Virus record (IMG/VR): IMGVR_UViG_3300031576_000001 | Coordinates: 124,001-188,000 of that record | DNA: 64,000 nucleotides | Strand: one strand, 5' to 3' | Shown here: positions 38,396-63,298 of the stretch, piece by piece | Layout of the letters: each line of letters begins with the position of its first letter | How positions within the stretch are numbered: the stretch's first letter is position 1 | Notes under the pieces: model-generated | Told to the model about the DNA's origin: nothing | Database searches by the model: none | The model's input: the letters and a program-made list of their open reading frames with translations, nothing else | Made by a program: the position numbers and the translations under genes

Positions 38396-38414
38396 GTAAG
38401 TGCCTCGCCCCGTG

Positions 38415-38708
38415 TAAGCAAGGCGTGGTGTCGGAACCCTCTTCGGTCGCCGTGCTGGACAACTTCTGCGGAGAGAGCAGCATACTGGCGTAAGCCTTGC
38501 ATACGAGAACGTCGAGACGGCGTAGACGATTAGCCTCTTTGCTCAGGCGGATAGCCTCCGCTTGGTCGCGTGCCTGGCAGATCAGGTCGGCAACATCCCT
38601 CATGTGGATCACGCCCAAGAGGAGGTACATGAAGTTCTCGACGACTCCGTTGAGCTTGTCTAGCTCGTAAGGGGTGGCGCCGTGGTTGGGTTTGGGGTTC
38701 TCGGTCAT
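38415..38708 (-). CDS. hypothetical protein
   Basis: ATG at 38708 coupled to upstream gene; first in-frame TTA 38415-38417 removes overlap with baseplate J (standard end 38370). Confidence 0.55.
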
Positions 38709-38974
38709 AACTCGTCCTCTACACCGCAGGCGTTCAGGTCGCTCGGAGGGAACACACGCACTTCCACCGTCTTGACCTCGGGCGTGACCCCAAGGTACTT
38801 TTTGACCCAAGCCTCCCCGTTGCCCTTGCGCACGTCCATCTTGAAGACCGGAGGCAGCCCGTGAAACCTTGGGTAGGGTAGCGGGGCGTCGCCCGGGGGG
38901 TACAGGAACACCTTGTCATGCGTGGGGTACACGTAAACCACCACGCGAGCAATCGGCAGACTGAGAGGCAACAT
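38708..38974 (-). CDS. hypothetical protein
   Basis: ATG after GTGTAAGGGGG; ends GAG-TTA-TGA (standard end 38705). Confidence 0.65.
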
Positions 38975-39438: not shown

Positions 39439-40602
39439 ATGACTGAGGGTTACGGACGAGACGACTACGGCAGGGGTCGCTACGGCTCTACGCCAGCGCT
39501 GGGGCTTACCAATGCCTTCTCGCTGGGTCCAACCTCGGCGGTATTGCAGTTCACGGCGCCCCTGGACCTTACCCACGGGTCCACGCTGGACCCGCTGTCC
39601 TACAGTATACCGGGGCTCACGGTTCTCTCGGTCCAAGTCCTCTTCCCTGACGTACTCCGGCTGGTCACGACGGTTCAAGGGTGGGTTCTGTACGAGGTCA
39701 CGGTACACCCCTCAGTCAGGAGTACCTCTCGGCTACCCATAGAGATTGACCAGCGCGTAGACACCTTCTCTGGGTACGCCACGACCCCCTCCTTCTTTGC
39801 TACGGCGCAAAGCAGCACAAGGGTCCAGGTCATTGCCGGGGCGGACCTCCTTAGTGACCTGGCGCTGGCCGCAGCCTCGTCCTACCAAGTCTTTGACCTC
39901 CTGGGCAACCCGGTACCCGTCATCCTGGCGACGCCTCGTACCTACCTTGGGGTGACAAGGCGGGTAGACCTTGACCTGGGCGTAGCCCTCCTACCCAACC
40001 AGTTCTACCGGGTGGTCGTGGCCAACGTGGTTTTCACGGTGGACGGTCGAAACCTCGTGCCTAACGAGGCAACCTTCCTGTGGAAGCCCAAGCCGTTGAC
40101 GGTAGCGGCAGCCATCCCCGACTTCAGCGGAGAGGTCTCCGGGGGGCTCTTTGGTACGCCGGCAGGCTTGGTCTTCTTCTCGCCCTCCCTAGAGGACGTA
40201 GCCCCTCTCAGCGCTATACAGATCGACGAGCTATCGGTTTGTAGTCGTGCCTACGAGGTCTATGAGTACCCAAAGCCAGTTGACCCCTTGCCCCTGTCCA
40301 CCTTCGGGGGCTACAACCCAGGGCAGACCAACAACACGGCGTATGTCCTGTGGGCTCCCTTCCCCAGACTAAACGAAGCCAAGATGGCGCTGTCTGCCAT
40401 CTACCCCGAGGTCTACGCCGGGGCTAACAGTGGTCGCTGCGTTGCCGTGCTAGACGAGCCTCATGACCCCCTCTTGGTATCCCTGCTCAATAACCCCTAC
40501 TGGCAGACCTTCGGTACGGGCGTCCTGCACCCCTTCAAGACAGCTAGTAACCTGGCACCTATACCAGCCGGCACCACAACCACAATCACCATCGTCCCCT
40601 TA
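39439..40602 (+). CDS. Ig-like-domain virion protein
   Basis: YG-repeat N-terminus; two Ig-like repeats; first in-frame TTA 40600-40602 (standard end 40635 overlaps next ATG). Confidence 0.65.
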
Positions 40603-41302: not shown

Positions 41303-43909
41303 ATGACATTCAAAGAATACGGTCCTGGGGTGTCTGGTTACCTCGACCCCGAGGAAAGAGCATTCCTGACAGGTGTATTTCAGTCCGCCAAGCCAGTGCT
41401 TGACACAGAGCTGAACCTGGCTTCAGACCTTGAGGACCAGATTAGCCAGGGAGTCCCTCTCAGTGGTACACCCTCTGGGTGGCTCACGCGAGACGCTATC
41501 GACCAGCCTGATAACTTCCCCATCTTTCAGGCTGTAGGCGCGTCAAATACCCTGCAAGTCTCAGGTCCGCTACTAGCTAACGTGAATGGTTGGCTTGTCC
41601 GTGTCACCAACACGGGTATCGCCCCTGGTAACCAGCTAGACCTTGGGGCGGGACCGGCGGGTGCGGCTTCCAAGAGGGTGGACTTTGTACTTCTAGAGGT
41701 TTGGCTAAGGCTTCTCTCGGCGGCTCCGTCTACGGTAGGCAAGAGCCCAGCGGCTCGAATCTGGCGTAACGGTAACGTCAAAGTGTCTCCGGCTGACGAT
41801 CTGGTAGTCAACTTCCCTGATGACATACTCGACGTGAATGTGGGCTCCGAGACGACCAAGAGGGTACAGGTACAATACCGTCTCAGGGTGGTTCAGGGGG
41901 TGGACCTCTTTAGTTACCCGGACGGGATGAGTGACCCCCTCATTGTAGCCCGCACGGTGCCCCCCAACGCGGCGACCCCAGACGGGGCAGTGCCCCCGGC
42001 GCTCTACCCTTACCAGAACCAGGACGCTAACGGGGACACTGGGCTCTGGCGGGCTGGCCTTGGGGACGCAACGTCGGCTTCCGACCTGGGGACCGTGGAT
42101 GGGTTTATGTACGCCATCCCCTTTGCGGCTGTTTTCCGTAGAAACACAACCGCTTTTGCCAAGAACAGTAACCATAATGGGGGTATACTCTCCCCCGGAC
42201 CTAGCGACCGCCCCGATGGTCTCTTTCACAACGTCATTGTCCTAGACGACGTGGCGGACCTACGGCGCCTTGTAGCCTCGGAGTCGTGGTCCCTTCCCGA
42301 AGTTCTACAGCGCAACCTTCGGCTCATGCTGGACAACCAACTGAGAACCGAGTGGGAAGAGACCCCCAACGGGGGCGGGGTGTGGGGTCACAGTAATCTC
42401 TGGGCAGACGAGATTGGGCCCGTAGACACGCCTGGCGCTACACTCATCGGTGATTTTGACGCAGTGCTCCGTAGGTTCAGTGACCGGGCTGTCCTAGAGA
42501 TAGCCACGCTGAGGATCACTGGACCCTTCGTGGACGGGCAAGTCATCACCCTCAACCCCACCGTGCTCCCTGTCTACCCTTACGCGGCTTTCAACTGGGC
42601 GTCCTTTGCACCCTCTGAGGTACGCTGGCTCGACGTGGTAAGCGCCCGCTTTGACGGAGAGGGTGTTGCCGGGGCTACCCACGTTGACGCCCCTATCGTG
42701 ACCATGACCGGCTTTGGTACGGACCCGGTAGGTCCAGTGACACTCACGCTGGGCACGGTCTCGACCATACCCATCACGACGGAGGCGCTCTACGTTGACC
42801 TCCTGATAGCATATCCCAACTTTAGGGGTGCTCAAGGCAGTGGCTTGACCCGTACCCCAGTAGCTAACTACCCCTTGGACGTTACCGGGGCGAGCGGGGC
42901 GGTACAGATCAACAACCCGGTGCAACTACCGGCTGCCGCACCCATCCTCTTTAGCCAGCTAAACGTGGGGTCAGACTTCTCACACCGAGAGGTACGGCTA
43001 CAATACGAAACCCTCTCTCAGGTCGTGCTGGTCAATGCCCCGGCTGCCGTGGGTGTCTCGACGATTGACCTCCCCGAGAGGGCACTAGCTATAACGCTCA
43101 TTGAGCGTAGTCCTTTCCCTGGTCCGTTTGCACCCATCGTGGGGGGGTTTACAATAGACGCCTCGGGGCGCGTAGTCACGCTGACCAACCCGGCAGACTT
43201 TACAACCACCGTGTTGGATCGATGGCGCGTGACCCTGCAAGCGGTGCGCCCTCTACCGCAAAACGGCGAGCAACTGACGCTGTACTACCCCGCGAGGGCA
43301 CCCCAGGCGGTACGAAGTGCCTTGCTGGGCGTCGCCAAGGTTTTTCACCCCAAGCTCGTTGGGGACACCTTGCTAGCCATCACTACGGGTAGCGGTAGCC
43401 AGGGAGAGGGTTACCCATTCCCTTACGCTTACGTGCAAACAGGGGGTGTTTACCCCACGTCAATTGGTACGTTTGGCGGTGAGCATGAGCTAGACGGTCC
43501 CGCGACTCTCTCTGTGTCGGACTTCAACGCCACCACAGGCTGGCTCAAACTTCACCCCTACGTGGGGTACGAGCCCACTGGACCTGTCACCTTTACCAGG
43601 GCGCCCACCGACGCTGACATAGAGGGACGTAGCTTCTTTACGGGCGTACCACCTGGGGACTACATACCCAACACGTTTGCACAATTGCTGAGCGACCCCT
43701 CGCGTCACAAAAACGTACTACCCCTCCTCTTGGAGCTACCGTTTGCCAGTCCGCCTCTGGGCTCGCAGGGTGCCTTGTACTTCGGAATCCTCATGAGGTG
43801 GGCCATGGACGCTCAAAACTCGGTCGTTATGAACCCCGACTTGACACTCAACACCACCACACTGTCCATCTTCCGTACCAAGGGTCTCTTGACCGGAAGG
43901 AAGGCGTTA
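41303..43909 (+). CDS. tail fibre/baseplate-attached protein, paralog of 53823
   Basis: N-terminal 'VFQSAKPVLDTELN' baseplate-docking-type motif; first in-frame TTA 43907-43909 overlaps next ATG as TT-ATG (standard end 43993). Confidence 0.7.
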
Positions 43910-46096: not shown

Positions 46097-49000
46097 ATGA
46101 GCGCCACACACACACCGACTACGACCGAGACCAATCTGACGGTGCCCGAGAGGGAGGCTTTGCGTCATGCCGACCTCTTCTCTCAGGAAAAAGCTCTCAC
46201 GCTGGGCGGCAACGAACCCTTTACCACGGGGGTTAGCCAGACCTTTGCAGACCATCTTTCCCCTACGCCCACCGAAGAACCGGGTAAGGGGTTGGGGACG
46301 TTTACCAAGGTGAATCTGCCCGCTGAGGTAGCCTCTTGGTACGGACCCACGCAGCCAACCCAAGGCACAGAGGGTCGGGCGCTCAACATCTCGACCTGGC
46401 AAGACCTTACCCAGACTTTTGGGCTTTCAGTCTTGCCAGGGGACGTACTCTTGGTAAAAGCCAAGAGCGGGTCTACGACGGACAACGCTTACGCGGTGGG
46501 CACTGTGTCTGCACTGACAGGCACAACCCTCACGCTGACCAACATTGTCAACCCCTCCAACGTGGGCTCCGAGGATGAGCTAGACCCCGCGCCCCTAGAG
46601 GTAGGCTGGAGCTACATCGTCATCCGTCCTAACGCCAAGAGGCTCTTTGCGCTTCCTGGGTCTGGACCCTTGGGGAGTGAGCAAGCCTTTCTCTTCGTGG
46701 ACAGCTCGGCGCCTCACACGGTCGCAGCCCCCAGGCTCGACGGTATCGAGGGCGCCCGTATCACCAAGATCGTACCCCCTCAGCTTGGTACGGGCGACAG
46801 GGCGGACTCGGTTTACGACTTCGGCGCACGCACGGGGCTAGACAAGCTGGGGTACAGGGTCGTCTTGTACCCTGATAACGGGGCAGGCGCACCAGACCTT
46901 ACCAAGCCGATCACGTCCACCACGCCGGTTCTGGACAGCACCAAGCCGGCGGCGGACCAGAGGATGACGGTGGACTACCACGCTGGCGTGGTACGGTTTG
47001 CCATCCCTCCGGTGACGGGTAGTGAGGTCAAACCCAGTGCCCTCTGCGTGGAACCTGCCACAGGGAGGCTGCGCCTCTATGCTGTCTACTGGGCTTCGCA
47101 ACCCACGGTAGCTCCTTACGTAGAGGGCGCTCCCAAGGAGCTTTACCACGTAAGGTCGGATGAGTACGACGCTAAGGCGGCGGGCTTTGTCCGGTACGAC
47201 GCTGCCCGCGAGGCTTGGTTGCTAGGGGCTACTGACACCGGAGAGGAACTTTACGTCCAGGCGCTCACAGGGACGGGGGTTACGTACTTTGGGGTCCAAG
47301 ACAGCACTACACCGCTCTCGACGGAGAGATACTTTGCGTACACTCAGGGCGATAACGCTTGGAAGTTCAAGAGGCAGCCGCTAACTGAGCCGGTGACAGA
47401 CCCCGCTACGTCCATGGACCTTGTGGTCGCGGACAAGACGGCGTTTACGGTGGGCGCGGGCGCTAACCCCCCGCAGAACCCCGGGGGGGACTACAACCCC
47501 TCTGGGCTGGTAGGCTACCGAGACCCCACGACCAAGCTGCAAGAGGCAGTCAAGGCTGCGATTCTTGACGGTTACGGCGAGGTTCATCTTCGGAGAGGGG
47601 AGTACCGTTTGACCAGCACGGTCACGGTGCCCCCTGGCGTGAAGATCACTGGCGAGGGTGCGGCTACCAGGGTGGTCTCTAAACCGGATGGTGCTGGCGA
47701 CGCTCACGCCCTCTTCAAGTTTGGCGCAAACACGCCTTGGGGGGTGTGGGACGCTGATTACCCTCTCTCAGGGAGCTACACCCCTCCTAGCGTAACTCTT
47801 GACCCTACGGCAAGGATTGAGGGGTATGATATTGTTTGGAACCCTGTACGCCGTGTATGGGGTGTAACGTGGGCGGACAGTGTAGCTAACGAGGTTTACT
47901 TCCGAGAGGTGGACCTACAGGGTCAGTGGTCCTCTCAGACTCTCACGGTAGCGACGCTCCCCCTCTTTACTCGCTTCACGGCGCACGCTCTAGCTCCGCA
48001 CCATACCACGGGCCACTACCCCAGGATGGTTCACGTAGAGGGTACGGATGAGTACGTCGTGGTTTACGTGCGCGACACAGGTGCCGGGCCAGAGTCCGTT
48101 ATCGAGACGGTAAAACGGTTGGCTGGTGCTTTCAGTTTGAAGTTCCCGTCCACCACAGTTACGGGGGACTACGCAAATAACAGTACGCCAAGTCTAGCCT
48201 CTTCGGGCTCCGAGGTACGTCTGGCGTTCTCCTCGTTTGCTTCCGATTACAGCACGGTGAGTGTACAGACGGCGAGCTATGATGTAGGCACAGGTCTTCT
48301 TACACCGGTAGACACCACGGGGGACCGTGACGCAAATCGCATCATCACGTCCGTGGACATCGCGGCTAAGAACGACAGCACCTACGCCGTGGTCTGGTCC
48401 GAGAGACAAGGACTCCTTGTTACGTCGGTCTGTGGTACAACGGTAAGCTCAAATGTGGTTACCGTTGGTGGGATTATTGTGCTCCTACTGCTCCCTGGGA
48501 TGCGCTTTCTCTGTCACGACAACTTGGCCTCCGTGGATAACGGTAGGAGCGGGGTCATCGTAGGCGTGGCGGGGCTGAACGTCACGGTGGCTTTTGATGA
48601 TGGTGACCAATTCTTTCACTCGAATACCGCGGGTTTCAACTTCTCAGCGGCGCCCCTGTCCACGATATACGCAGCGACTTCAACCGATATGGCAGGGGGG
48701 AGCACGCTCCTTGTCGTGGTTGCTGGTGGTGAAATTACTTCTTTCTACAGTAGAGACGAGCGCGAGCCTGACTTTGTTAGGATTTGTCGTGGGGGTGACG
48801 GCTGGCTCATTGTGTACCAACTGTTTGACACCGTGGCTCGTCTAGCGGGCGACACCATGCGGAACCTTGACGACGGTTTCAACACAGTGTTTTACGACAG
48901 TAGCGCCACCTACCCCCCGGACGGTGACGTACCGTTGGCCAGCCTCTCGGTACACAGAGAGTACCTCTCTACGTGCTTTGCTTTGCTGGGGGACAACTTT

Positions 49001-52000
49001 ACACTCACGGGGCCAACACCTTCCGACAGAACAGGTCTCAACCCCACCAGCCTCTCAGACTTCCCTGCGATGGGTGCGGACACACACCGTACCGGGCGAG
49101 TGCTAGGGGGTCGTAAGCCTATCCGGGTTCCTTGGGCAAACAGCGTTCTCAACACGTCGCGCCCTGAGCTAGAGGTCTCTGCCAGGAATTACTGCCACGC
49201 TTGGAACCTTGTAGACGACAAAGTACCCTCTTTGTTGCCCGACGTGACGTGGACCGGAGAGGATTGGATGGTGGTCTCTCCGACCATGGCGGGCATTTGG
49301 TCGGACACGGGGGTAATCAGTAATGACGCGGGCACCGAGATCCTGACTGACGAGAGCTTCATCTTTGGTACAGGGTCAAGCCCAACGTCCAACAATGATG
49401 GGTCTTTTCTACCCCTCACGGTTACACCCTTCTCTGACGCGGTTTACTTTCCAGTCACGGGTGAGACTGTTTTGATTACGGGGGTGCGCAGCGAGCACGT
49501 AATTGAACTCGCTTCTATTCCCGTTGCGCCCGTGGGTATCCCTGGGAGCCAGAAAGAGTGGTGTTTGGTTAACGGTAGCACCACACTAGGACTATCGGGG
49601 GGAATGCCTAACCTGGGTTTCCGGGTCTCTACCAAGGGTGAGGTACTCACTACCTCTTCGTACCTCACCTTCGCCATCCCCGAATCCGTTTCGACTTCTC
49701 GCCCGCGTAGCCAAGAGGTTCTCAACCGTAGCCTCTGGGGTGACGCTACCTTTTCAACCCGAAAGTACGGGGACACCAGCCTCTCTTGGAATGACCAAGT
49801 AAGCACGTCCAAGCTCGCCGCGGACCTCACGGTACAAGGTGTCACTTTGGGCGCCCCTAAGCCTACCTCGGAGCAAGCCCGGCTAGAGAGCCCCCTCTGT
49901 GCCATTGCGTGGGGTGAGAACACCTACGGACTGGTAGACCGGATCACGGGGGGTATCGGTGGGGGTCGCGTCAACAAGCTCAACTTCTACCGCCAGAGCT
50001 TCGGACGGTGGAACTCCTCTCTGGAGAGCATGACCCTTACCGGGGGCGCGGCTACCCTGAGCCAAGAGTCCTTCGAGCACGTCTACACCCGTCACGGGTG
50101 GGTCACGTCAGCGCAAGTGGGGTGGTCCACGGACGGCTACCGCACCTTCTTCCCCCATTTCACAGCCCGCTTCTTGAAGGGGCTCATGAACACGGGCAGC
50201 CTCTTTGACCTTGCGTCCGGTGACCCTGCTCGCGATACAGATTGGTTTGTTGACCTCTCAGCGATGGTTGCTGACCAAGAGGGTGGTCATGGGGTCAGGG
50301 TCCGGGGCACACCGTTTGCGCTAACACCCACGAGAGACCCCACGGACAACTTCTTGGGGATTGCCAACGTGCCAGGGGTCGGCTTGACCAACCTGAACAC
50401 GATGCAACCCAAGTCTCTTTGGAATGGTCGTGACTGGGTAGTCTTCTTCCCGGGGGTTTTGGTCAACGCGCAGCCCGCGAACGCCATTTCGATTGAGAAG
50501 ATGATGCACCACCGTGGGGTCATATCCATGGTGGTCTTCCCCGGAGAGGGTCTGGAAATGGACGGGGCGTTGGTAGGTGACGAGCTTACCAACCCGGCGG
50601 CACTGGCGACCAACCTACGGTCAGCCAAGGTGGTAGCCACGGGGCACATAACCTGCGGGGCGTACAACCTGAGCATGAACCGAGAGGTAGTCTTGCTTGA
50701 CGTAGCCTACTCGGGCAAGACGTACTGCGTTGTGTGGTCGATGGGGCTACAGACCACGGACCCTTCTACAGTGAGCACGGCGTTCACGGGTGCCAATGGT
50801 GGTAACCTCATAGGGTACACTCTATTTCACGACAGCACCGGAACCACGACAGCCTTTGGTAACGTGGTGTCTGGTAGCATTTCCGCACCAGACACCTTTG
50901 ACCCGGGAGGAGGGGTGACACACCTCCTAGAGCTTGACTCTACCATCCCGGGCTTGACGGTAGACAACCAGCAACGCAAGGCGAGGTTCTTGTCACCCAA
51001 GATTATTTGGGATGGTAAGCAATTTCAAATCTTCGTGGTTCACCGTGACGACAACTACGGCGCGCTGGCTACAGACCACGGTTTCATGAAACAGGTTGCA
51101 GTGGCAGAGGATGGCAGTGGGCACACATTGCAAATGCGGAATGCTGCAAATCGCTATGTCCCAGTGGCGGGATACGGCACGGCAAGGGTGCTAGGGCAGT
51201 TCACCATTGACCCCTACTTGAAGCCCGCGGGTGCGAAGCTGGTGTTGAGGCTCAACCTCACGACTTCAGGGCCATTCGGAGAGTATGGTGGTGTTGTGCT
51301 GCCTGGGGACACTTTGGTCATAACCAAAGTAACGGATTTGCTGGGCACTTTGGAGGAATTCAAGCTCGCTGGCGTTTACACGGTAACGGATTACGATGCA
51401 CAGAACGGTTATGTTTCCCTTTCCGCTGACTTCGATAGCACGCTAGCAGGGCCGTCTTACCTGGCATACGGCTATCTTCTCTCTGGGGGTATGGCCGCCA
51501 AGAGGGATGCTCCCTCCGGGGCGTTGACTAACGCCGGTCAGAACTACCTACAGACGGTGGTTTCCACCGAGCCCACTTCCACGTTGCAAAACATGGTCCG
51601 TATCTGGGACACCGCCTACAACGAAGAGAATGGGGAGTATACCCTCTTGGTGGAAGCCGAGGGCGACGGGGGCTTTTTCCTCGGGCTTCTAGCCTTCTCA
51701 CGGTCTACAGGGTCCGTTGTCCGTGAAGTCGAGCTGGCAGGTATAGTTGGACCCGTTACCTACCTTGACGCCTCTCTAGCTTGGAACGGCGACCGTTACT
51801 TCGTCGCCGCTGCCAAGAAAGACGCCATCGCAGGGGAGTCTGTGGACACCTACCTCGTCAGCCGTGACTTCATGGTCGAAGAGGCTAATGCACCGGCCTA
51901 CGTGCCCACTGACTTCGTGGGTAACACGGGGCGGAAGATGCCTGGACCTGGGTACGGGGCGTACTCCGCAGCTTCCAACCTGCCGCTGGCTAGTTTCCGG

Positions 52001-53188
52001 GGCGTCAAGGTCAAGTGGAACCCTGTCCTTGGACGGTGGGGTCTGGCGGTCTCTCTTGTGTGGTCCGGTCACGGGGCGGCTCAACTTTACCAGACCGGGT
52101 GGAATGTCAGGTCTCTTCTCGACGAGCCGGCAACAACCCTTGGGGTGGGTGTCCGGGTAGGTCGCGACTTCGGTTTGACTGTGGGAACTGCGTACCGCCA
52201 GCCTGGAATGCGCTTCTTGACGCAGAGGCTCACCCCCCTCTTTGGTCTCACGGCGCCAGACTTTGCATCTAGCTTGCCCCAGGTTATCGCGGATACCGTA
52301 ACCTTGGTCAACTCCTCTCAAAACGCCAAGGTGGGCGACCTCTTTGCAGTTGCAGGGAGAGGGCCAGGGGGCACAGATATTCGCAGAACCGCCACCCTTT
52401 TCGGGGGCGCGGCGCTGGACAATGCCAGCGTGGACATGCCGTGGAATGACGCAACGAACGCCATTGATGTGGCAGTGGGTGATTATGACGCTGTGCCCCC
52501 GGACGGAACCTTTACTGTTGTGGGACGCCTCGCTCAGTACAATTTGCTGTTCAACGAAGGCGCTGGCGTTACCTATACCGCGACAAGTCTTACGGATACT
52601 GATGTCTTCCCAGGGTTCATTACCATGGGAGTGCAACCAGGGGACCGTGTTTACGTGGGCGGTAACGCTTTGGTCTACGTGCTGTCCGTGGCGCCCACCG
52701 TGCTCACCACAACACCCTTTGGGGTGCTCCCCCCCGCAGGCACGCACTACACGGTCACACGTCCCTCCTCTTACCTCTACAACCTGAAGTCCTCGCTAAG
52801 CACAATCTTGCTCACGGGTGACGTGGATGCCGCTACCCAGCGCACCCCCCTCTTGGAGTCTACCGGGGGACACACCCTGGAATTCCTACCCAGAGAGGAC
52901 GTGTTCCTGATTACGCTTGGGTACGGCACGCCTTGTGTAGAGGTAGACGGAGCCGAAGGCGTCGCTCTAAGTAACCTCACCCTCGGGGGTAGCCAGGACA
53001 TCACGGTCAAAGTAGCTCAACACCCCTGGCTTGCTCAGTCCGGGCTTGCCGTGGGCTGCGTTGACTCCGGCTCCCCCCTCTACCCCAAGAGACCTTCTCT
53101 GGCTTTCAGGTTCCCCGTGCCTAGAGAAGCCCCCGTGACGCTAAGCAATGTGGTAAGCCGCACCAAAATGCGGTACAAGGGAGTCTTA
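46097..53188 (+). CDS. very large tailspike/fibre-like protein
   Basis: 'VHLRRGEYRLTSTVTVPPGVKITGEG' beta-helix entry motif and many 'W.G..Y.V.W' propeller-like repeats; first in-frame TTA 53186-53188 follows ~2360 TTA-free codons. Confidence 0.7.
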
Positions 53189-53191
53189 GCC

Positions 53192-53809
53192 ATGGGCGCC
53201 ACCCTCTACCTCATTGACCTTTACAACGACGAGATCAATGCAGCCCTGTCGGACAGCGCCGCTGCCCTGACCAGCAAAGAGGTCACCGGGAACTACGTCA
53301 TCCCCTACGGGCTCTCCCTACCCCTCTTGGCGCCCCCTACAAGCCGAGCCAACTTGCTCTTGCAGAAGCATCAAGGGCTCCTGGCCATGCACCCTGGCTT
53401 TACGAACCAAGCCTACGATGACTGCCTGGACGCCAACGGCTTTGACCTGACCTACCCCTTCACCCTCGGCTCTTTCGGGGAGCGGGGCTCTATCAAGTTC
53501 AACACGGCGCAAACCGTCATGGTGCCGCTGGCGTTCGCGCCAGCCCAGGTCGTTCTCAACTTCGAGCCGTACACGTACAGCGACAGTGACAACGCGACGG
53601 GCTTGTACCAGCGAACCTACCAAGAGGTTGCACCCTCGGTCTTTACTGCCACGGCGAGCTTCAACAATGGGGCTACCTTCGTTAGCCTCTTGGCAGGCGG
53701 TTTGGAGAGCATCCCCCTGGCAGACCAAGGAAACCAGTTCATTCTGAGGCTGACACTGGCGTTCCCTGGTCCTCACGTCGGGCTTGCAGGTTGGTCCTTG
53801 CTATACTAA
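53192..53809 (+). CDS. hypothetical structural protein (205 aa), separate gene under TTA-stop reading
   Basis: AAGGGAG SD at 53177-53183, then TTA-GCC-ATG; fused in frame to 46097 under the standard code. Confidence 0.6.
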   Translation: MGATLYLIDLYNDEINAALSDSAAALTSKEVTGNYVIPYGLSLPLLAPPTSRANLLLQKHQGLLAMHPGFTNQAYDDCLDANGFDLTYPFTLGSFGERGSIKFNTAQTVMVPLAFAPAQVVLNFEPYTYSDSDNATGLYQRTYQEVAPSVFTATASFNNGATFVSLLAGGLESIPLADQGNQFILRLTLAFPGPHVGLAGWSLLY

Positions 53810-53822: not shown

Positions 53823-56800
53823 ATGAGTAACGACAACCTGGGACCAGGGGTCTCTCGTGTTCTCGACCCCACGTCAACACAGTACGACCTCGTTGTCTGG
53901 CAAGCGGACAAGCCTCCGCTCGATTCCGAGCTGAACCTGCTTCAACAGCTAGCCACGCAAGGGCTAGCTCAGTCCCATCACGTCAACACGCCCTCCGGGT
54001 GGCTCTCCAACAGCACCAACCCCAGCGACGTTTACGAAACCAACCCCCTCTGGTCCAACTGGTTCAAGTTTGGTCACCAAGGCTCTGGCGAGAAACGTGC
54101 CATCCCCTGGGCTGTCGTCAACGGGTGGTATATCCCGGTCACCGCTACCCAAACAGGCACCCCCCCGGGTAGCGCAGACAACACAGCGACTTGGAACCGG
54201 GTTACACTAGACCCCCCTCCCCTGAACGCAGGGGACAAGCGGGTTGACTTCATTTTCCTAGAGGCGTGGCGAGCCCGCGTACCCACGGGGGTTGCCGCCT
54301 CTAAGCCAGAGGCCGCCTCCGTGTACCGCTTTGGTAACGTAGAGGGGGGCACGTCCTACCTACCCGACGACCTACAAGACCCTGAGATCGGAGTCGAGAC
54401 TACCCAGAGGGTACAGGTTCAGTACCGGCTCAGGGTAGTCACGGGGCTTCTAGGGCTCGCGGCGTACCCTGATGGTTTTGACATCACCAAGGTTTTTGCG
54501 AGGGGGCTAGCTGCCGTACCTGGGAGCTACACGTTCGCCAACATGAGGCAAGAGCTAGGTGACCCTGGGCTCTGGCGCGCTGGTGACGGCTCGCTACCTG
54601 CCCAGACCGCCCTTGGCACGGTAGACGGCTACACTTACGCAATCCCGCTGGCTTTCATCTTCCGGCGCAACGGAGTGGCGTGGAATGGTGACCCCTTCGC
54701 TAACTTGAATGGGGGGGTCAATCGCAACCCTACGGCCACCTCTCGGGCGGGTTTCAAGACGTTTTCTGCGATGCCCACGCTGGCAACAGATTTGTCGTCA
54801 ACAAGTTTGTCGTCAACTTTGTCAGCCTACACGGCGAACACGTTGCCTTTGCCAGCCACCCCTACCTCTCCGGTGCTCCTCAAGATTGGGGACGAGCTAG
54901 TCACCTACCAAACCGTCTCAGGCACGACGTTGACGCTGGTAGCCCGTGGGGTCAACGGTACCAGGGCAGAGACCCACAAGGCGGGCACGCCGGTAGAAAT
55001 TGTGCCTGGGCGACCCGATGGTTACTTTGCAGACCAGATTGCAGCCACGGACATTCTGGACGCTAGGCACGTCGTAAGCCCCCAGGGGTTTGACTACAAC
55101 GCCCTTCTTAGGGGGGCACTAGGCAAGCTCCTGAGAGGGGACTTGCAGGCTAATTGGAAGAGTGCAGATCAGACCCAGGGTCCGTGGCTTCTCTACCAGG
55201 ACAAGGTAACAGATGGGGCGGTGGCCCTCGGGGTAACCAAGCTGGACGGTCCTAACCTTGTCAGGCGCGTTTGGAGTGACGCCTCTACGCTGGAAACGGT
55301 GGACACCCACGTCACCCCTTCGCCTGGCATCGTCCCCGGTCCCGGGGCAGTTCAGATTGCAACCCCGTGGTCCTTGTCGCTACCCGCAGAGACCACGTTT
55401 CAGTCGGTACCGAATGAGTTTAACTCAGGGGACATTATCAGGATTCAGCCTAACGCCTTTCAGCAAGGGCTAGGCGCGGACACCGACCAAGTACGGTTTG
55501 TCAACGATGGCTTGGCTGGGGCGGTACAGGTTCGTATCCGAGGTCAGTCCTTTTCGATAGACCCCATTTTCATCACAGTAACCCCCCTAAACCCCAACCC
55601 TGGAGACCCTCTAGTCATTACCTTTGTGGGTTCTGGGATCTACCCCATTGCGGGCGACGTGGCGATCACGGTGAGGGTGCTGTACGGACCCGGTAGAGGC
55701 ACGTCACGCAAGTTTGACAGCGTACACTCCCTGGCGATGCTGACGAATGCCGGGGGTGAGTACCTCTTGGCGGGTCCGACAGTACCGGCTAGCAACGTGC
55801 CGCTTCGCGCGGCTTGGCTCCCTCTGTGGTCCAGGTTCCGTAACACCCTCTTTGCAGGACAATGGCCCACTACCGCAGAGGCTTACGCTGACGCTTCTAG
55901 CAAGACGGTGGCTATCCAGCCTTTCCGTCGCATCACGTTCCCCCAGGCAGTAACGCAGGACGGCAACGCCGTAAACGGTTATGGTAACGTGACCTACGTG
56001 GGTGCAAACGCTACCACCAATGGCTCAGACACCCTCAGTAAGGTGGATGGCACCTTTGCCGGCTTTCTGGTGGGTTTTGCCCTGGTCATTACGAGTGGGC
56101 CCGCCAAGGGTCGTTACACTGTGACAGCCGTACCCAATCCTCTACAAGTACAGGTTGAGGGCATCTTGCCCTCAACACTGCCTCTAGGTATACCTGTATC
56201 AGCCTTCCACTTTGAGGACGCACGGGGTATCATGCCCACGGTGGACAGCAACTTGCTGCCAAAGTGGGTTACCACGGACCCCTTGGGGCTATTTGCTGGG
56301 AGTGTCATTGGACCGCTCAACAACGCATTCCAGCGGAACCTGTACGTTACACTGCCCCGTCACCTTGTACCGGGGTGGGGTGACATTCTCTCCCCGGTCA
56401 TGTTGCCCGGGGGCTCTGTGGTGTTTGACGAGGGTGTCAACTTCGGGTTGCAGTCTAAACAGGGTAGCGTCTATTCGGATACCAACCACAACCCACAGTA
56501 TATCAACTACGTTAACGCACCCTACACTAACGCGGTCTTCTCGACGCACAACCTCACTTCCCTGCCTGGTACGGTAGCGGCGACATACAACGCGGTTACA
56601 CCCTCTCCGGGTGTAGCGGGTGCAAGGTTTTACTCTGACCCCACGGGTAGAGCGGGCGTCGAGCTACCCCCGTTCTATGGTGTGGCTCGCCTCTGGGCAG
56701 TGTACGAGGCTCAGGACTACCTGACCAATGGCAGCGCTTACGTTAGTGCGACGAGAAGCCCACTGGTCATTGGAAGCCCGGCTCAGAACCTTCTACGGCA

Positions 56801-58142
56801 AAACTTTGAGGGTCCGTTCTTCTTCATCACGAAGGACGATGACGGTGACAGCACGTTCGTACTCAACGCCAACGCGCTGGACCTCAGCAAGTCTACCCTC
56901 GTACCCATTCCCACCTTTACCGCAGGACGGTACGTTATCGAGGCGAGCATCTTCGGTTTTGACCGTAACTCGTTCAACGTAAACTCAGATTTCCGGCTTG
57001 TCCTCTCGCGAAACCGCACGCTGGCGAACAGCTCTGGACCGCTACGCAGCGCTAATCTGGGCGTTACCCTCCCTGGGGTGACGGCGATACTCCCTGGACC
57101 TTTGGCTGCCTCTGACGGCGTGGTCATCAATTACAGTCGAGCGGCTTACCAGGGCGATGCTTGGGGTAGTGAGACGACTTACACGGACACTGCGCAGCGC
57201 ATGGGACCGCTAAGTTCCGTTGATGCATACCAGCTAAGCGCCACACAACTTGACCAGAACGCCCTGACGCGACCTTACCAGAAGCCCCTAGAGGTTCTCG
57301 CCTCTGTGTCATTCCAGACCACGGCTGGCACGGGTAGGTTGGGGATGGAGGCATCGTCGGGTCTAAATGTGCTGAACATTGGGTACGAAAATCCCGCGGT
57401 CTACCCACCACCCTCCCCCGTGGCGGCCCGTCCGAGGAGCATTCTTGGCGCGCTGGTGGGCATCACTGAGTCCTACGGTACAGACCTGTCAGCGTGTACG
57501 TCCAGGCTACCTCTTGGGGGTCTCTTCCGCGATAAAGACTTCCGGGGTGAGCCGGTAGCCACGGGTAAGTCAGCCTTCGTCGTGGAGCCTGGCGAAACGA
57601 ACCTTGGTCTAGCCTCACTGTCCCCAAGAGGGCGCCAAGAGGTAAGGGAGCTACCTGTGACCCCCGTAACGTCTTGCAGCGGAGAGGCTGGTGACGTGAT
57701 TGTCCACGTTGACGGCGAGCAGTCAAGCTACGTGCCCCTTGTGAACTATCGCACCACGCGGGGGGGCTCTTTGTACAGCGCGACGTTGCCCCGTCCGGGT
57801 GGCGAGGTCTCTGCCAGGATGAGCCAGATCACAACGCCCGTAGCCAACCACCCCAACGTGCTCTCTGTCAAAGCCCTGCTTGTTCGCAACGCTTTGACTC
57901 AGAACGGGTTCGGTGAGGTCTCTTCGGGTGGGGAGCTTATGATGCTCATTGCTACCGAGGTTCACCGGCTGAACGTCTCTGGAATCCTGACCGCTACAGG
58001 GGGCGTGACTATCTCGACCAATGGCACCAAAGAGGGTTACAGCGCCGCTGATCTATACCGGATCGAGGGTCGCCCGCTAGAGTCAGACCACGTAGGGCTC
58101 AGGGTCAACCCCTTTGGTATTACCCTGACAAGGCGTGCATTA
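53823..58142 (+). CDS. large tail fibre/baseplate-attached protein, paralog of 41303
   Basis: 'VVWQADKPPLDSELN' N-terminus; first in-frame TTA 58140-58142 (standard end 58148). Confidence 0.7.
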
Positions 58143-58912: not shown

Positions 58913-59299
58913 CTAGGTAGGCTCACCAAGAGGGTTGCGTTCGTTGTAGAGCCGGCAAGCGGTCTCGTGGGTACAGGGGAGACGTTGCCACCAAAGAACC
59001 CCCTTGTCGGGCACGCTGGTGTACCCCCAGAAGGTGTTCTCTCCCTCGTAGGGGACGGCGGGTACAAGCCAGCCGATCTGGTCACCCTCCCCGCTAGCGT
59101 AGGGGCTACGCCAGCCGGGGTCGTGGCTCTTGGCTTGGGCTTTCTCAGCGCAGAGCGCGCAGAAGAGGTCCGTGTAGTTTGCGCAAGTGTTGTGCTCACG
59201 CCACAGGCGGACGTCCCTCGCGCCGCACCCGTCGCAGGCGTAAGCCTGGGGTGTCGCCGGGTTCTGGTAGCTGAAGTCTCGGAAGTTGCGTTCTGGCAT
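58913..59299 (-). CDS. zinc-binding hypothetical protein
   Basis: CDGC...CALC plus Trp-rich 'GDQIGWLVPAVP...WGYTSVP'. Confidence 0.7.
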   Translation of the reverse strand: MPERNFRDFSYQNPATPQAYACDGCGARDVRLWREHNTCANYTDLFCALCAEKAQAKSHDPGWRSPYASGEGDQIGWLVPAVPYEGENTFWGYTSVPDKGVLWWQRLPCTHETACRLYNERNPLGEPT

Positions 59300-59768
59300 A
59301 GCCCTCAACTACACCGAGGATCTCTTGGGCTGCCGTGATGAGGTCTGAGGTGAGACCTACCCGGGGGTCGGTTTGCAGGAAGTTAGGACTACCTACAAAG
59401 AGGGGTAGGTCATCAATCACCACGTAGGTTTGGCATGGCGTAAGGTGAGCTTGAAGGAACCTGCGGATTTCCTGGGCCTTATTGGGTGTACCTGTGCGTG
59501 GGGTAACGTGGGCTAGTTCCCCGAGAAAGCCGTGGGTTGAGAGCCACCCTTGACACTGCTCGACGGAGAACAGGGGGTACCAGTGAGAGGAGAGCACGAA
59601 CACTACGCCCTCTTGGACGAGACCATTAAGGAGGCACACCTTGGAGGTCATGAGGAGTCGCCCGGGGTAGAAGCTGTCCACGTCCCGCTGGCGACTTTGG
59701 CGGCAAAGGTGCTCCGTGGTGTTGAGCACACCGTCAAAATCCACGAGAACGAAGCGCGGTAGGGTCAT
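59241..59768 (-). CDS. HAD-family phosphoesterase (Swiss-Army-Knife RNA-repair type)
   Basis: DFDGVLN, VLSSHW, K..EI and YVVIDD motifs; first in-frame TTA 59241-59243 (standard end 59196). Confidence 0.75.
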
Positions 59769-61061: not shown

Positions 61062-61409
61062 ATGACCACGATAGCTGAACGTGTTGCCAGTCGCGCCGCC
61101 GCCTCTCCGCAGAACGGAGTGCAGTGGGTACGTGATGAGATCCTCATTCAGAAGTGCTCTACGGGGAAGACACCTATCGTCGAGGTCGCGGCGTACTTGC
61201 ACAACATCATCAAGAGCAGCCAAGAGATACACAAGCTGCTTAGTGAGGCTACAAAGAATGCCCAGGATGCCGTGAGTGGTGGCGACACTATCACGGCTCA
61301 GGATTTGGAGAGGGCGATCTACAAAGAGGCTGTGCTGCCGGCGGGGGGTGAAGACCCTCTGGGCAAGCTGCTCGCCAAGGTGATTGCCCATGGGGACTAC
61401 GTTTACTTA
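61062..61409 (+). CDS. hypothetical protein
   Basis: ATG 2 nt after upstream TAG; first in-frame TTA 61407-61409 (standard end 61448). Confidence 0.65.
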
Positions 61410-61996
61410 CCCTTGGCTTTGGAAACGGGCGCAGTCCCCTTCTTGTGACTACGTGCCTTGACGGGTTTGAAGTGCTCAGGGGGTGGCTCCCTGGGTCGCT
61501 TGATCTTGGTGACGGGCTTAGCTGACGGGTCGAGGAGGTTGATTGCCTGGCAGAGGTTCTCTGAGCAAAGACCTAGCGCCGGGTTGACCTTGACGAGGCG
61601 GGGGGCGTAGTCAGGCATGAACTTGAAGACCTCTTCGCTGTCCAGGGCGACCCAAGAGGTTGCGGGGTGCTCAGCGAGGAACCTGCGGATCGTGGTGGCT
61701 TTGGCGGGCTCTAGCTTGTGATTGACCAGGGCAGACACTTCCCCAGTAAAGCCGTGGCTTTTCAGGTGCGTGTTTAGCTGCTCCACGTCATACCGTGCCC
61801 ACCACCGAGAGGTCACCACGACCTTACCCTTACCTACCAAGTAGTTCAGCCTGCGAACTAGAGGAGGGCAGAGGCGTTGAGCAGGTTGTCTCTTGAGCCC
61901 CTCTGGTGACAGCCTCTTGGCTAGGTTGCTCAGGTACACAGGGGTATTCAATACCCCATCCAGTTCTAGGAAGATGAACTTTACGGGCTCCGTCAT
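61403..61996 (-). CDS. degenerate HAD-family (Swiss-Army-Knife type) paralog
   Basis: ELDGVLN (first Asp replaced by Glu), VVTSRW, WVALDS. Confidence 0.7.
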   Translation of the reverse strand: MTEPVKFIFLELDGVLNTPVYLSNLAKRLSPEGLKRQPAQRLCPPLVRRLNYLVGKGKVVVTSRWWARYDVEQLNTHLKSHGFTGEVSALVNHKLEPAKATTIRRFLAEHPATSWVALDSEEVFKFMPDYAPRLVKVNPALGLCSENLCQAINLLDPSAKPVTKIKRPREPPPEHFKPVKARSHKKGTAPVSKAKGK

Positions 61997-62066
61997 GGTT
62001 TTCAGACTCAGAAAGTACACCGAGGTAGCCTCTTCGCCTGAGAGGGGGTAGCCTTAGCCTTTAGCC

Positions 62067-62663
62067 ATGAGATACCGAGTCCTCCTTGCTGTTACCCTCT
62101 TCGCCCCCACCGTGCTCGCCCAAGACCCTGTGCAAACCGAGAACCCCGCGGCTTGTACGTCGGACAGTGTTTGCATACCCAGGGAGGATCTAGCTGTTTT
62201 CGTTCAACTTTTGAAAGAGCGGCAGTGCTTGGTACGCACCAAGCCTGAGATTACCCTCTCGCCCATCCCGCTGGTCATTGACCGACAGGGTAGAGTCTAC
62301 GGAGAGACAAAGACCACCCTACTCATACAATGGTGTAACTTTGAGATTACAGGGGGTGGGCCCGTCAAGATTGACGTGGCGGTACAGGATGAGCCCGTGC
62401 CCCCACCACCCAAGCCGTCCCTCTGGCAGCCCGCGCTAAGGCTAGGCGTGGGCTACACAGTGCAAGCCTCTTGGGATGCTTTCTTGCTAGTCTCCCCTCT
62501 GGCGTACCGGGGCGTGAGTCTCAACGGTCACGCTGGGGTGCGCTCCATAGGTGGCGGTTTGGGCTACGGTGTAACCTCTTACGGAGGCTTTTACGCTGGG
62601 TACAGCTACAGCTACGAGGGTAAGCACGGGGCTACGCTGGGCGTATACGGCCGGCTCTGGTTA
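62067..62663 (+). CDS. secreted / outer-membrane-type protein
   Basis: Signal peptide, Pro linker, amphipathic Gly/Tyr beta strands; ends in Trp at first in-frame TTA 62661-62663 (standard end 62717). Confidence 0.6.
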
Positions 62664-62674
62664 GTCCACCCCGC

Positions 62675-63298
62675 TAAGAGGGTGCTACCGACTAGAAAAG
62701 CGTCTTCACCAAGGTAGCGCTCGTACAAGGCGCTTAGCTCGTCGCAGGTTTGCTGGACTTGACTCTGGTAACTCTCGTCGATGCGACAACCCCAGAGGTA
62801 CAGCGACTTGTAGAGACCGTCCCTTGTCACGTTGTGGAGTGTGTTAGCCAGCGCTCCGTGCCCCAAGGAGTTACCAACCCCACCAAAACCGCGGGTAACC
62901 CCCCTACCCAGCGTCAACTCGCAACGGTACACGGCACCCTCTTTGGTGACCGTCACTTTGGAACCCAGCCTGTCCCTATCGCCCTTAGCCCAGAGGGTAG
63001 CCAGACTTATCGCCAGGTGCTCCATCCCAGGCACGTTTCTCTTTTTGTCCAAGAGAACCCGTCGCAGTCTGTTCCATTGGCTTTCACTGATACGGTCGGA
63101 CCAGAAGTTGTCTGCATAAAACCTGTCCCCCAGGTGCTCAAGGAACGCCTCTCGGTAGGACGCCCCGTTGGTTTTCCGCACCGGACCCTCTGCAAACCGA
63201 GCCGTGAGCGAGAAAAGCCCGTTTCGTTCCTGGCAGGTTAGCTGCCAGTCCCTCTTGACGTTGTTTATCACGATGGCTGTGCTCAAGTAATCCAGCAT
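62675..63298 (-). CDS. hypothetical protein
   Basis: First in-frame TTA 62675-62677 leaves an 11-nt gap to the convergent gene (standard end 62612). Confidence 0.6.

What the first reader, a model, noticed from the sequence alone, without database searches (positions are those of the whole stretch)
53177..53809. Hidden gene behind an in-frame TTA: possible readthrough-controlled fusion to the giant tailspike
The 2570-aa ORF contains a single TTA, preceded by a Shine-Dalgarno (AAGGGAG) and followed by GCC-ATG. This splits it into a 2363-aa protein and a 205-aa protein. Because the two are in frame, any Leu decoding of UUA would produce a fusion. Inference: UUA readthrough could tune virion protein isoforms or act as a host-range barrier, loosely analogous to bldA-dependent TTA control in Streptomyces.
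Basis: partly seen in the sequence, partly recalled or inferred. Interest (0 to 1): 0.65.

Follow-up and report, generated by a model that had tools for sequence, protein, structure and literature searches.

The report
Phage uses TTA as stop codon
The "2570-aa ORF" is really two separate genes divided by a TTA codon, because this 322-kb phage and at least two relatives appear to use TTA (normally leucine) as a fourth stop codon, a change I found reported only in mitochondria and plastids.

Summary
ORF 46097..53809 has one in-frame TTA (53186), with AAGGGAG before it and an ATG at 53192 after it.

The 205-aa part is an independent, conserved gene. An exhaustive profile search found 261 relatives. 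All of the best 150 are short stand-alone proteins (128-351 aa, mostly about 200-225), and none is fused to a long protein. In six related phages it is a separate gene after a ~2300-2500-aa gene.

The TTA is not a local device. In 169.6 kb of this phage (180 genes, 52,381 codons), all 64 in-frame TTAs lie in 3' tails or between same-frame neighbouring genes. About 273 would be expected, and 467 and 361 occur in the other two frames.

TTAs align exactly with TGA stops of relatives, and the reverse also occurs. Protein similarity collapses right after them. The tails behind them are as long as the stretches behind true stops.

Related phages outside this clade use TTA as an ordinary internal codon.

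A regulated readthrough fusion is not supported. In both other TTA-clade phages the downstream gene is out of frame.

The best reading is that TTA terminates translation genome-wide. The mechanism is unidentified.

The parts
46097..53185 (+). Gene for a giant 2363-aa protein of the tail/baseplate module; function unknown
   Evidence: ORF. Syntenic homologues of 2291-2510 aa occur in L002/L006, L003, L004, L036 and L037. No Pfam, PHROG or PDB sequence match.
53186..53188 (+). TTA acting as the terminator of the giant gene
   Evidence: It is the only in-frame TTA. TTA is in-frame at the homologous position in L002 and L036, and TGA is there in L003, L004 and L037. Similarity to the L002 and L036 proteins collapses after it.
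53177..53183 (+). Shine-Dalgarno-like AAGGGAG, 8 nt before ATG 53192
   Evidence: Sequence. Only 37 of 121 genes have an SD-like 4-mer against a 21% background, so this is a comparatively strong site.
53192..53809 (+). Independent gene for a conserved 205-aa protein (C-terminal CBM-like beta-sandwich), ending in TAA
   Evidence: Coding score is +0.42 bits/codon. There are 7 stand-alone homologues and 261 family members; the best 150 are 128-351 aa and none is a long fusion. The N-terminus M..YLIDL is conserved. Model pLDDT 70; residues 69-205 resemble CBM or phage-tail jelly rolls at Z about 7.
53823..58142 (+). Next gene (1439 codons) ending in TTA at 58140-58142; table 11 adds only 'G' before TAA
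   Evidence: The window TTA aligns with the L002 TGA after ...LT(R/P)RA. There is a weak PHROG 'tail protein' hit.
43907..43909 (+). Terminal TTA of the 868-aa gene 41303..43906, overlapping the next ATG (TTATG)
   Evidence...GRKA-TTA aligns with ...GRKA-TGA (L002)...GRKS-TGA (L036) and ...NRRA-TGA (L003, L004). The 27-codon tail scores as non-coding.
40600..40602 (+). Terminal TTA of gene 39439..40599
   Evidence: TTA sits at the same position after ...(I/L)VP in the window, L006 and L036, and the sequence diverges afterwards.
10443..10445 (+). Terminal TTA of the 1152-aa gene 6987..10442, 4 nt before GTG 10450
   Evidence: It aligns with the TGA(TG) of the distant standard-code relative L008. 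The 95-codon tail scores -0.44 bits/codon, against +0.27 in the frame of the next gene.
6985..6987 (+). Terminal TTA of gene 5725..6984, overlapping the next ATG (TTATG)
4788..4790 (+). Terminal TTA of gene 4107..4787 (a second TTA at 4797 lies in the tail)
29144..29146 (+). Terminal TTA of the ~1930-aa gene ending at 29143 (a second TTA at 29189 lies in the tail)
   Evidence: The tail scores -0.6 bits/codon.
61407..61409 (+). Terminal TTA of gene 61062..61406; it shrinks the overlap with the convergent gene 61403..62020
62661..62663 (+). Terminal TTA of gene 62067..62660; together with the minus-strand TTA at 62675-62677 it removes a 106-nt convergent overlap
62675..62677 (-). Terminal TTA (TAA on the + strand) of the minus-strand gene ending here (table-11 ORF 62612..63298)
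59241..59243 (-). Terminal TTA of the minus-strand gene (table-11 ORF 59196..59768)
38708..38710 (-). Terminal TTA of the minus-strand gene 38711..38974, in a TTATG overlap with the next gene's start (an in-frame TGA follows immediately)
38415..38417 (-). Terminal TTA of the minus-strand gene (table-11 ORF 38370..38708)
22645..22647 (-). In-frame TTA 85 codons before the table-11 stop of the weakly coding minus ORF 22390..23019; probably a gene end, but uncertain
   Evidence: Coding score is 0.24 before it and 0.04 after it.

Best explanation
In this jumbo phage (JGI contig Ga0247727_10000022, 322.6 kb) and at least two relatives, TTA is not used as a leucine codon. It marks the ends of genes and so acts as a fourth termination codon beside TGA, TAA and TAG.

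The table-11 ORF 46097..53809 is therefore two genes that happen to share a frame. The first is a 2363-aa tail-module protein that ends at TTA 53186. The second is a conserved 205-aa protein with a CBM-like beta-sandwich, which starts at ATG 53192 behind its own Shine-Dalgarno site AAGGGAG.

What is shown: the two genes are separate; TTA is absent from gene interiors; TTA interchanges with standard stops between relatives; the sequence behind a TTA behaves as non-coding.

What is inferred: ribosomes actually terminate at UUA. The most likely mechanism, by analogy with organelles where UUA became a stop, is a class-I release factor of RF2 type with an altered codon-recognition motif, encoded by the host or by the unexamined half of the phage, together with absence of a UUA-reading tRNA-Leu. 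A codon-capture route is plausible, because relatives already use TTA very rarely.
For: (1) The 205-aa protein is a stand-alone family. Seven homologues are 205-244 aa. A length-unrestricted HMM search of 1.84 billion representatives gave 261 hits. The best 150 are 128-351 aa, almost all matched end to end, with no long fusion. N-termini align at the ATG.

(2) Synteny [~870][~740][~2300-2500][~205-220][~1440-1530 aa] is conserved in L002/L006, L003, L004, L036 and L037.

(3) At the junction, L003, L004 and L037 have TGA three nt before the ATG. L002 and L036 have an in-frame TTA, with the next gene in another frame.

(4) Genome-wide, in 169.6 kb (180 genes, 52,381 codons) there are 64 in-frame TTAs, against about 273 expected and 467 and 361 in the other two frames. 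54 of the 64 lie within the last 36 codons, where 12.4% would be expected (p = 4e-39). In the 130.6-kb merged subset, 86% of TTAs lie within the last 36 codons; no other codon exceeds 17%.

(5) The distance from the first TTA to the next in-frame standard stop has median 16.5 codons. The distance from a true stop to the next stop has median 16 (Mann-Whitney p = 0.89).

(6) Tails score as non-coding in the upstream frame.

(7) TTA aligns with a standard stop at homologous C-termini at 43907, 58140, 10443 and L006 7366-7368 (opposite the window TGA). TTA is conserved at 40600 and 53186, with similarity collapsing after it.

(8) Four of the nine ORFs whose first TTA lies more than 36 codons from the table-11 stop resolve as same-frame gene pairs, three of them with an SD-like site and a start just after the TTA. 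One is a ThyX domain, then TTA-GTG, then a CxxCxxCC domain.

(9) Controls: seven related phages outside the clade have TTAs spread evenly along their genes.

(10) It is not an assembly error. The same contig was assembled independently by JGI and ENA, and a Logan assembly carries a gene with an identical product in the same neighbourhood.

(11) Precedent: Leu-to-stop reassignment of UUA linked to an RF2 Ser204 substitution (PMC12574857).
Against: There is no direct protein or ribosome evidence. No release-factor gene, no tRNA and no RF-like GGQ motif was found in the 53% of the genome examined, so the termination machinery is unidentified.

The host is unknown. The only hint is that a clade member sits in a MAG labelled Lysinibacter sp..

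47% of the genome was not examined and could hold internal TTAs.

A few long tails are not fully explained: 85 codons at window 22645, and 132, 97 and 63 codons elsewhere on the contig.

Low-level decoding of TTA as Leu cannot be excluded.
Confidence: 0.85

Rival explanations
1. UUA is an unassigned ('hungry') codon. The host lacks a UUA-reading tRNA and no release factor recognises UUA. Ribosomes stall there and the peptide is freed by a codon-independent rescue route (ArfB-like, or after mRNA cleavage). TTA would then end genes without being a true RF-read stop.
For: The sequence signatures are the same as for a true stop. No RF or tRNA was found in 169.6 kb. Relatives use TTA very rarely (5 of 6461 codons in L003, 0 of 5835 in L004), as expected when the tRNA is scarce. 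Codon disappearance is known in the high-GC actinobacterium Micrococcus luteus for AGA and AUA (PMC4695839).
Against: About 28% of genes (51 of 180) end in TTA, and it swaps freely with TGA between relatives. That is hard to reconcile with a slow, costly stall, or with tmRNA tagging that would mark structural proteins for degradation. There is no enrichment of nearby back-up stops.
Confidence: 0.12
2. TTA is a rare Leu codon whose decoding is limited by a bldA-like tRNA. Regulated readthrough would then yield a functional 2570-aa fusion isoform of the giant protein, or act as a host-range barrier.
For: In this genome the two genes are in frame, only 3 nt separate the TTA from the ATG, and TTA is Leu in the standard code. 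UUA-dependent control, and a candidate UUA-linked recoding event in a Streptomyces phage, are known (PMC10732093; PMC4255298). A possible Actinomycetota link exists.
Against: The downstream gene is out of frame in L002 and L036, so the fusion is not conserved. No fused homologue appears among the best 150 of 261 family members. There is no stimulatory RNA structure. TTAs are never internal and lie at gene ends genome-wide, unlike Streptomyces, where they are biased to gene starts or interdomain linkers. Tails behind the other TTAs are non-coding and not conserved.
Confidence: 0.04
3. This is an ordinary single gene. TTA is simply a very rare Leu codon in a 58% GC genome, and the 2570-aa protein is made as one chain with a C-terminal CBM-like domain.
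For: Table 11 gives an uninterrupted ORF, and the coding score is positive on both sides of the TTA.
Against: All relatives have two genes. The positional bias has p = 4e-39. TTA aligns with TGA at homologous gene ends. A strong SD and ATG coincide with the conserved N-terminus.
Confidence: 0.01

Closest known systems
Leu-to-stop reassignment of UUA in organelles: labyrinthulean/Thraustochytrium mitochondria (NCBI table 23, from my own knowledge), peDinoflagellate plastids (UUA/UCA), and UUR in Marsupiomonadales and Pseudoscourfieldia mitochondria (PMC12574857, PMC6821328)
   Same: The codon is the same. It is absent from gene interiors and is found exactly where homologues have stop codons. 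It ends a large share of genes (here 51 of 180). The evidence is of the same kind as was used to establish those codes.
   Different: Those are small organelle genomes with their own reduced tRNA sets and identified RF changes (RF2 Ser204 substitution, or modified mtRF1a). Here it is a 322-kb, 58% GC bacteriophage lineage using bacterial-type translation. The release factor and the tRNA status are unknown. [quoted passage not shown] I found no report for a phage or bacterium.
Stop-codon recoding in phages (TAG or TGA read as an amino acid, e.g. Lak megaphages and crAss-like phages; PMC8346664, PMC7886860)
   Same: A phage lineage whose code departs from table 11, so standard gene callers mis-annotate it. 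It occurs among large uncultivated phages.
   Different: The direction is opposite. There a stop becomes sense and genes look fragmented. Here a sense codon becomes a stop, so genes look fused, over-long or falsely overlapping. All three standard stops remain in use (TGA 77, TAA 29, TAG 23).
bldA / rare-UUA control in Streptomyces and the candidate UUA-triggered bypassing in Streptomyces phage terminase genes (PMC4255298, PMC10732093)
   Same: Extreme rarity of TTA in a GC-rich setting, a functional role for the codon, and a possible Actinomycetota host.
   Different: There UUA is decoded as Leu (or bypassed) inside coding regions and the downstream sequence is a functional protein. Here TTA never lies inside conserved coding sequence, and what follows it is non-coding or belongs to the next gene.
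Unassigned codons under GC pressure (AGA and AUA in Micrococcus luteus; codon-capture theory; PMC4695839)
   Same: It offers a plausible evolutionary route. TTA is already nearly absent in standard-code relatives.
   Different: An unassigned codon is simply avoided. Here the codon is actively used at about 28% of gene ends.

Membership tests
Sense-to-stop reassigned codon (UUA as terminator, as in NCBI table 23 and peDinoflagellate plastids) | The codon is absent from internal, conserved positions of coding sequences | tested here: met
   There are 0 in-frame TTAs in 15,355 interior codons of 18 large genes, against 186 and 110 in the other frames. All 64 TTAs in 52,381 codons lie in 3' tails or between same-frame genes.
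Sense-to-stop reassigned codon (UUA as terminator, as in NCBI table 23 and peDinoflagellate plastids) | The codon occurs where homologues have standard stop codons | tested here: met
   43907, 58140, 10443 and 53186 align with TGA in relatives. L006 TTA aligns with the window TGA.
Sense-to-stop reassigned codon (UUA as terminator, as in NCBI table 23 and peDinoflagellate plastids) | Sequence behind the codon behaves as non-coding or intergenic | tested here: met
   Tail coding scores are negative. The tail-length distribution equals that after true stops. Similarity collapses after the TTA.
Sense-to-stop reassigned codon (UUA as terminator, as in NCBI table 23 and peDinoflagellate plastids) | No cognate tRNA (tRNA-Leu, anticodon UAA) in the translating system | tested here: inconclusive
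   No tRNA at all was found in 169.6 kb of the phage. The host is unknown and 47% of the phage was not examined.
Sense-to-stop reassigned codon (UUA as terminator, as in NCBI table 23 and peDinoflagellate plastids) | A release factor with an altered codon-recognition motif (e.g. RF2 Ser204 in SPF) | not testable with these tools
   No RF-like GGQ motif or Pfam RF hit was found in the examined part.
Sense-to-stop reassigned codon (UUA as terminator, as in NCBI table 23 and peDinoflagellate plastids) | Peptide release at the codon shown at protein level | not testable with these tools
   This needs proteomics, ribosome profiling or in vitro translation.
bldA-type TTA-dependent regulation | TTA lies inside coding sequence, and the downstream in-frame sequence is a conserved part of the same protein | tested here: not met
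   Homologues are separate genes. The frame differs in L002 and L036. There is no fusion among the best 150 of 261 family members.
bldA-type TTA-dependent regulation | TTAs are confined to a subset of genes (regulatory or late) and biased to gene starts | tested here: not met
   TTAs end both structural and replication genes and lie at 3' ends. The Streptomyces bias towards gene starts is described in PMC4255298.
Programmed stop-codon readthrough making a C-terminally extended virion protein | In-frame arrangement and extension conserved among relatives, often with a downstream RNA signal | tested here: not met
   The arrangement is in frame only in this genome. The fold z-score is +0.71.
Stop-to-sense recoded phages (TAG or TGA read as an amino acid) | In-frame standard stops inside conserved genes | tested here: not met
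   Long uninterrupted ORFs exist under table 11, and all three standard stops end genes.
CBM-like or phage-tail jelly-roll domain (for the 205-aa protein) | A beta-sandwich fold matching solved CBMs or tail proteins well above background | tested here: inconclusive
   Residues 69-205 give Z 7.2-5.4 to the HFTV1 tail, the phi812 baseplate and CBM6/22/35/36. This is within the tool's stated background range. BFVD E-values are 6e-5 to 8e-4. Model pLDDT is 70.

The most novel reading that the evidence does not exclude
UUA is a genuine release-factor-read stop codon, not only in this phage clade but also in its bacterial host (possibly a Microbacteriaceae actinobacterium). That would be a previously unrecognised bacterial genetic code with four stops, and the first sense-to-stop reassignment outside organelles. 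It could have escaped notice because table-11 gene callers silently read through it.
Probability: 0.35. Interest if true: 0.95.

Novelty: new variant of a known kind. Interest (0 to 1): 0.88.

Why it matters
In the papers read here, sense-to-stop reassignments appear only in mitochondria and one plastid lineage. Every phage or bacterial code change I found in the held library turns a stop into a sense codon.

A phage clade that ends about 28% of its genes with TTA would extend code plasticity to a new direction in the bacterial and phage world. It predicts an altered release factor, or loss of tRNA-Leu(UAA), in an identifiable host, which is directly testable.

It also exposes a blind spot. 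Standard pipelines produce fused ORFs (as here), false gene overlaps and truncated starts. For example, the database copy of the 724-aa neighbour is 700 aa.

Such a code also bears on phage-host barriers and on ideas for genetic isolation of engineered organisms.

Tried and rejected
Searches that found nothing useful:
- blastn of 51500-55500 and tblastn of the 724-aa neighbour against 50,697 phage records gave no match. DNA polymerase gave only distant hits, so no cultured relative or host was found.
- Pfam, PHROG and PDB sequence searches of the giant and 205-aa proteins found nothing.
- Rfam found nothing. There are no promoter-like or terminator-like sites near the junction and no RNA structure.
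- ARAGORN found no tRNA in any locus.
- A six-frame GGQ scan found no RF-like context. The one 'GGQNV' match, in gene 5725..6984, has no Pfam RF hit.
- The genome-contig scan with alignment A3 found nothing. The metagenome scan returned only the contig itself.
- Alignment A1 was too diverse for locus scans.

Ideas rejected:
- A +1 slip onto TAG at 'TTAG' as the real stop. Only 19 of 36 terminal TTAs are followed by G, and the best-supported sites read TTATG or TTAC.
- A local 'CTTAGCC' motif. It is scattered on both strands.
- Sequencing or base-modification artefact. The signal depends on reading frame, recurs in independent assemblies and is conserved in relatives.

Slips:
- One search used wrong minus-strand coordinates.
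- One search returned a place without DNA.

Full report
**1. The observation**

ORF 46097..53809 (+) is open for 2570 codons under table 11. It holds a single in-frame TTA at 53186-53188 (codon 2364). AAGGGAG lies at 53177-53183 and ATG at 53192, which gives pieces of 2363 and 205 aa. From position-specific base composition, 13.7 TTAs would be expected in this ORF. The other two frames of the same ORF hold 33 and 23.

**2. The 205-aa part is its own gene**

- A word-indexed search found seven stand-alone homologues of 205-244 aa. The best is 63% identical over 100% of the length.
- Their N-termini align at the ATG, with a conserved M..YLIDL motif.
- A profile search without any length restriction, over 1.84 billion representatives, found 261 family members. 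The best 150 are 128-351 aa and nearly all match end to end. None is a long fusion.
- Genomic context in six related large phage contigs shows the same gene order: about 870, 740, 2300-2500, 205-220 and 1440-1530 aa.
- At the junction, L003, L004 and L037 have TGA three nt before the ATG. L002 and L036 have an in-frame TTA at the homologous codon, but the downstream gene is in another frame.
- A fusion is therefore possible only in the window phage and is not conserved.
- No RNA structure surrounds the site (z = +0.71), and there is no promoter-like or terminator-like site.

**3. The TTA is part of a genome-wide pattern**

In the window, 20 in-frame TTAs occur in 51 genes on both strands. Every one lies in a 3' tail. 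Four sit 0-7 nt before the next gene's start while the table-11 ORF runs on:
- 6985: TTATG
- 10443: TTAccccGTG
- 43907: TTATG, after GGAAGGAAGG
- 53186: TTAgccATG

I extended the sequence along the source contig. It is IMGVR_UViG_3300031576_000001, also known as Ga0247727_10000022 (322,633 bp), and was independently assembled as ENA k141_3047311 (322,662 bp). The examined stretch runs from 84,522 to 254,111.

In these 169.6 kb:
- There are 180 genes and 52,381 codons.
- There are 64 in-frame TTAs in 51 genes. About 273 would be expected, and 467 and 361 occur in the +1 and +2 frames.
- 54 of the 64 lie within the last 36 codons, where 12.4% would be expected (binomial p = 4e-39).

In the 130.6-kb merged subset (121 genes, 43 in-frame TTAs), 86% of TTAs lie within the last 36 codons. 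No other sense codon exceeds 17% there.

The distance from the first TTA to the next in-frame standard stop has a median of 16.5 codons. This is indistinguishable from the distance from a true stop to the next stop (median 16; p = 0.89).

Tails score as non-coding in the upstream frame. The 95-codon tail after 10443 scores -0.44 bits/codon, against +0.27 in the frame of the next gene. Real genes average +0.34.

In nine ORFs the first TTA lies more than 36 codons from the table-11 stop. Four of them resolve as same-frame neighbouring genes:
- 53186, the site in question.
- L028 11811, followed by GGGAG and ATG.
- A ThyX domain, then TTA-GTG, then a CxxCxxCC domain.
- A 135 + 146-aa pair with GGAGG and ATG.

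Of the other five, the 96-codon tail after 10443 simply overlaps the next gene in another frame. The remaining four (85 codons at window 22645, and 132, 97 and 63 codons elsewhere on the contig) are not fully explained.

With TTA counted as a stop, gene ends are TGA 77, TTA 51, TAA 29 and TAG 23, and several convergent-gene overlaps disappear.

**4. Comparative evidence**

TTA in one genome aligns exactly with a standard stop in another:
- Window ...GRKA-TTA aligns with L002 ...GRKA-TGA, L036 ...GRKS-TGA, and L003/L004 ...NRRA-TGA.
- Window ...LTRRA-TTA aligns with L002 ...LTPRA-TGA.
- Window ...TWRIQF-TGA aligns with L006 ...TWRLTL-TTA.
- Window ...EAMRA-TTA aligns with the distant standard-code L008 ...RERNT-TGA(TG).

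At 40600 all three clade members keep TTA after ...(I/L)VP. At 53186 all three have TTA. In both places similarity collapses immediately afterwards.

L002/L006 and L036 also show TTAs only in tails.

As controls, seven relatives outside the clade (L003, L008, L009, L018, L022, L025, L026) have TTAs spread evenly along genes. The method therefore does not create the pattern.

**5. Interpretation**

The signal depends on reading frame, recurs in independent assemblies and is conserved across phages that share only 50-63% protein identity. It therefore reflects selection at the level of translation.

The best reading is that TTA terminates translation in this clade. How it does so is not shown.
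- I found no tRNA, no Rfam hit and no RF-like GGQ motif or Pfam RF domain in 53% of the genome.
- By analogy with labyrinthulean mitochondria and peDinoflagellate plastids, where UUA became a stop together with an RF2 Ser204 substitution (PMC12574857), I predict an altered RF2-type factor plus absence of tRNA-Leu(UAA), in the host or in the unexamined part of the phage.
- Both replication genes and structural genes lack internal TTAs. This suggests the rule holds from the start of infection, and so perhaps in the host itself.
- The only host hint is that clade member L036 is contig 1 of a GenBank MAG labelled Lysinibacter sp. (Microbacteriaceae). This could equally be mis-binning.
- A stall-and-rescue mechanism at an unassigned codon is the main mechanistic rival.
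- A +1 slip onto TAG is rejected, because only 19 of 36 terminal TTAs are followed by G.

**6. The proteins**

The giant 2363-aa protein has no detectable family. 'Tailspike' is a guess from its position downstream of a Baseplate_J-like gene (34949..38395).

The 205-aa protein model (pLDDT 70) has a C-terminal beta-sandwich resembling carbohydrate-binding modules and jelly-roll domains of phage tail and baseplate proteins. The scores are only middling (Z about 7; BFVD E about 6e-5). A glycan-binding accessory of the tail fibres is plausible but unproven.

**7. Novelty**

Full-text searches found no report of TTA/UUA as a stop in phages or bacteria. The sense-to-stop cases described in the papers read here are organellar (PMC6821328; PMC12574857).

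I rate this a new variant of a known kind (non-standard genetic codes) and of high interest.

It also has a practical consequence. Table-11 annotation of such phages yields fused ORFs, false overlaps and shifted starts; the database copy of the 724-aa neighbour is 700 aa.

Noticed in passing
window 2997-4103: An HNH endonuclease domain (Pfam PF01844, residues 316-359) sits in a 368-aa gene inside the structural gene block.
   Followed up: no
window 1-772 (L007 5912..10720): The first ORF of the window is the C-terminal end of a 1602-aa ORF that starts upstream of the window.
   Followed up: partly
terminal TTAs in the 130.6-kb merged stretch, contig 104,055-234,664: The base after a terminal TTA is never A (G 19, C 11, T 6, A 0 of 36). 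After standard stops A occurs in 18 of 85. The next two positions are also A-poor. This may be a termination context or TTAA avoidance.
   Followed up: partly
window 6985, 43907 and (minus strand) 38708: There are TTATG stop/start overlaps, the exact analogue of the TGATG and TAATG overlaps seen in relatives.
   Followed up: yes
contig 84,522-254,111 (window plus L016-L041): No tRNA gene occurs in 169.6 kb of a 322-kb jumbo phage (ARAGORN, several calls), and no Rfam family was found in the 126 kb scanned.
   Followed up: yes
L030 5432..7987 (contig ~217.4-219.9 kb): An 851-aa N6/N4 DNA methyltransferase has a weak intein-splicing hit (PF14890) between two methyltransferase hits. It may be an intein-containing gene.
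   Followed up: no
contig ~109.4-110.4 kb (L020 5375..6376): A 333-aa gene carries a precomputed Pfam hit to Volactin (PF25216). I read it as a possible actin-like cytoskeletal protein in a jumbo phage (listing).
   Followed up: no
L032 16640..18454: A 604-aa protein has a type IB topoisomerase domain (PF01028). NADAR, YAcAr, DUF6197 and Dam-like methyltransferase genes lie nearby.
   Followed up: no
L032 10564..12036: ThyX and a CxxCxxCC (putative metal-chelating) protein are annotated as one 490-aa protein, because a TTA followed by GTG separates them in frame.
   Followed up: yes
L036/L038 = JBBAQX010000001.1: Contig 1 (205 kb) of GenBank MAG 'Lysinibacter sp. isolate EUL_204' is a phage of this TTA clade. 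This is either a host hint (Microbacteriaceae) or mis-binning.
   Followed up: partly
whole contig: The JGI (322,633 bp) and ENA (322,662 bp) assemblies have nearly equal length but different start points, which suggests a complete, circularly permuted genome. A 55-kb Logan contig (SRR8536157) carries a gene with an identical product in the same gene neighbourhood.
   Followed up: no
window 53318-53776 (minus strand): A 152-aa antisense ORF lies inside the 205-aa gene. It scores -0.07 bits/codon against +0.42 for the plus strand, so it is probably spurious.
   Followed up: yes
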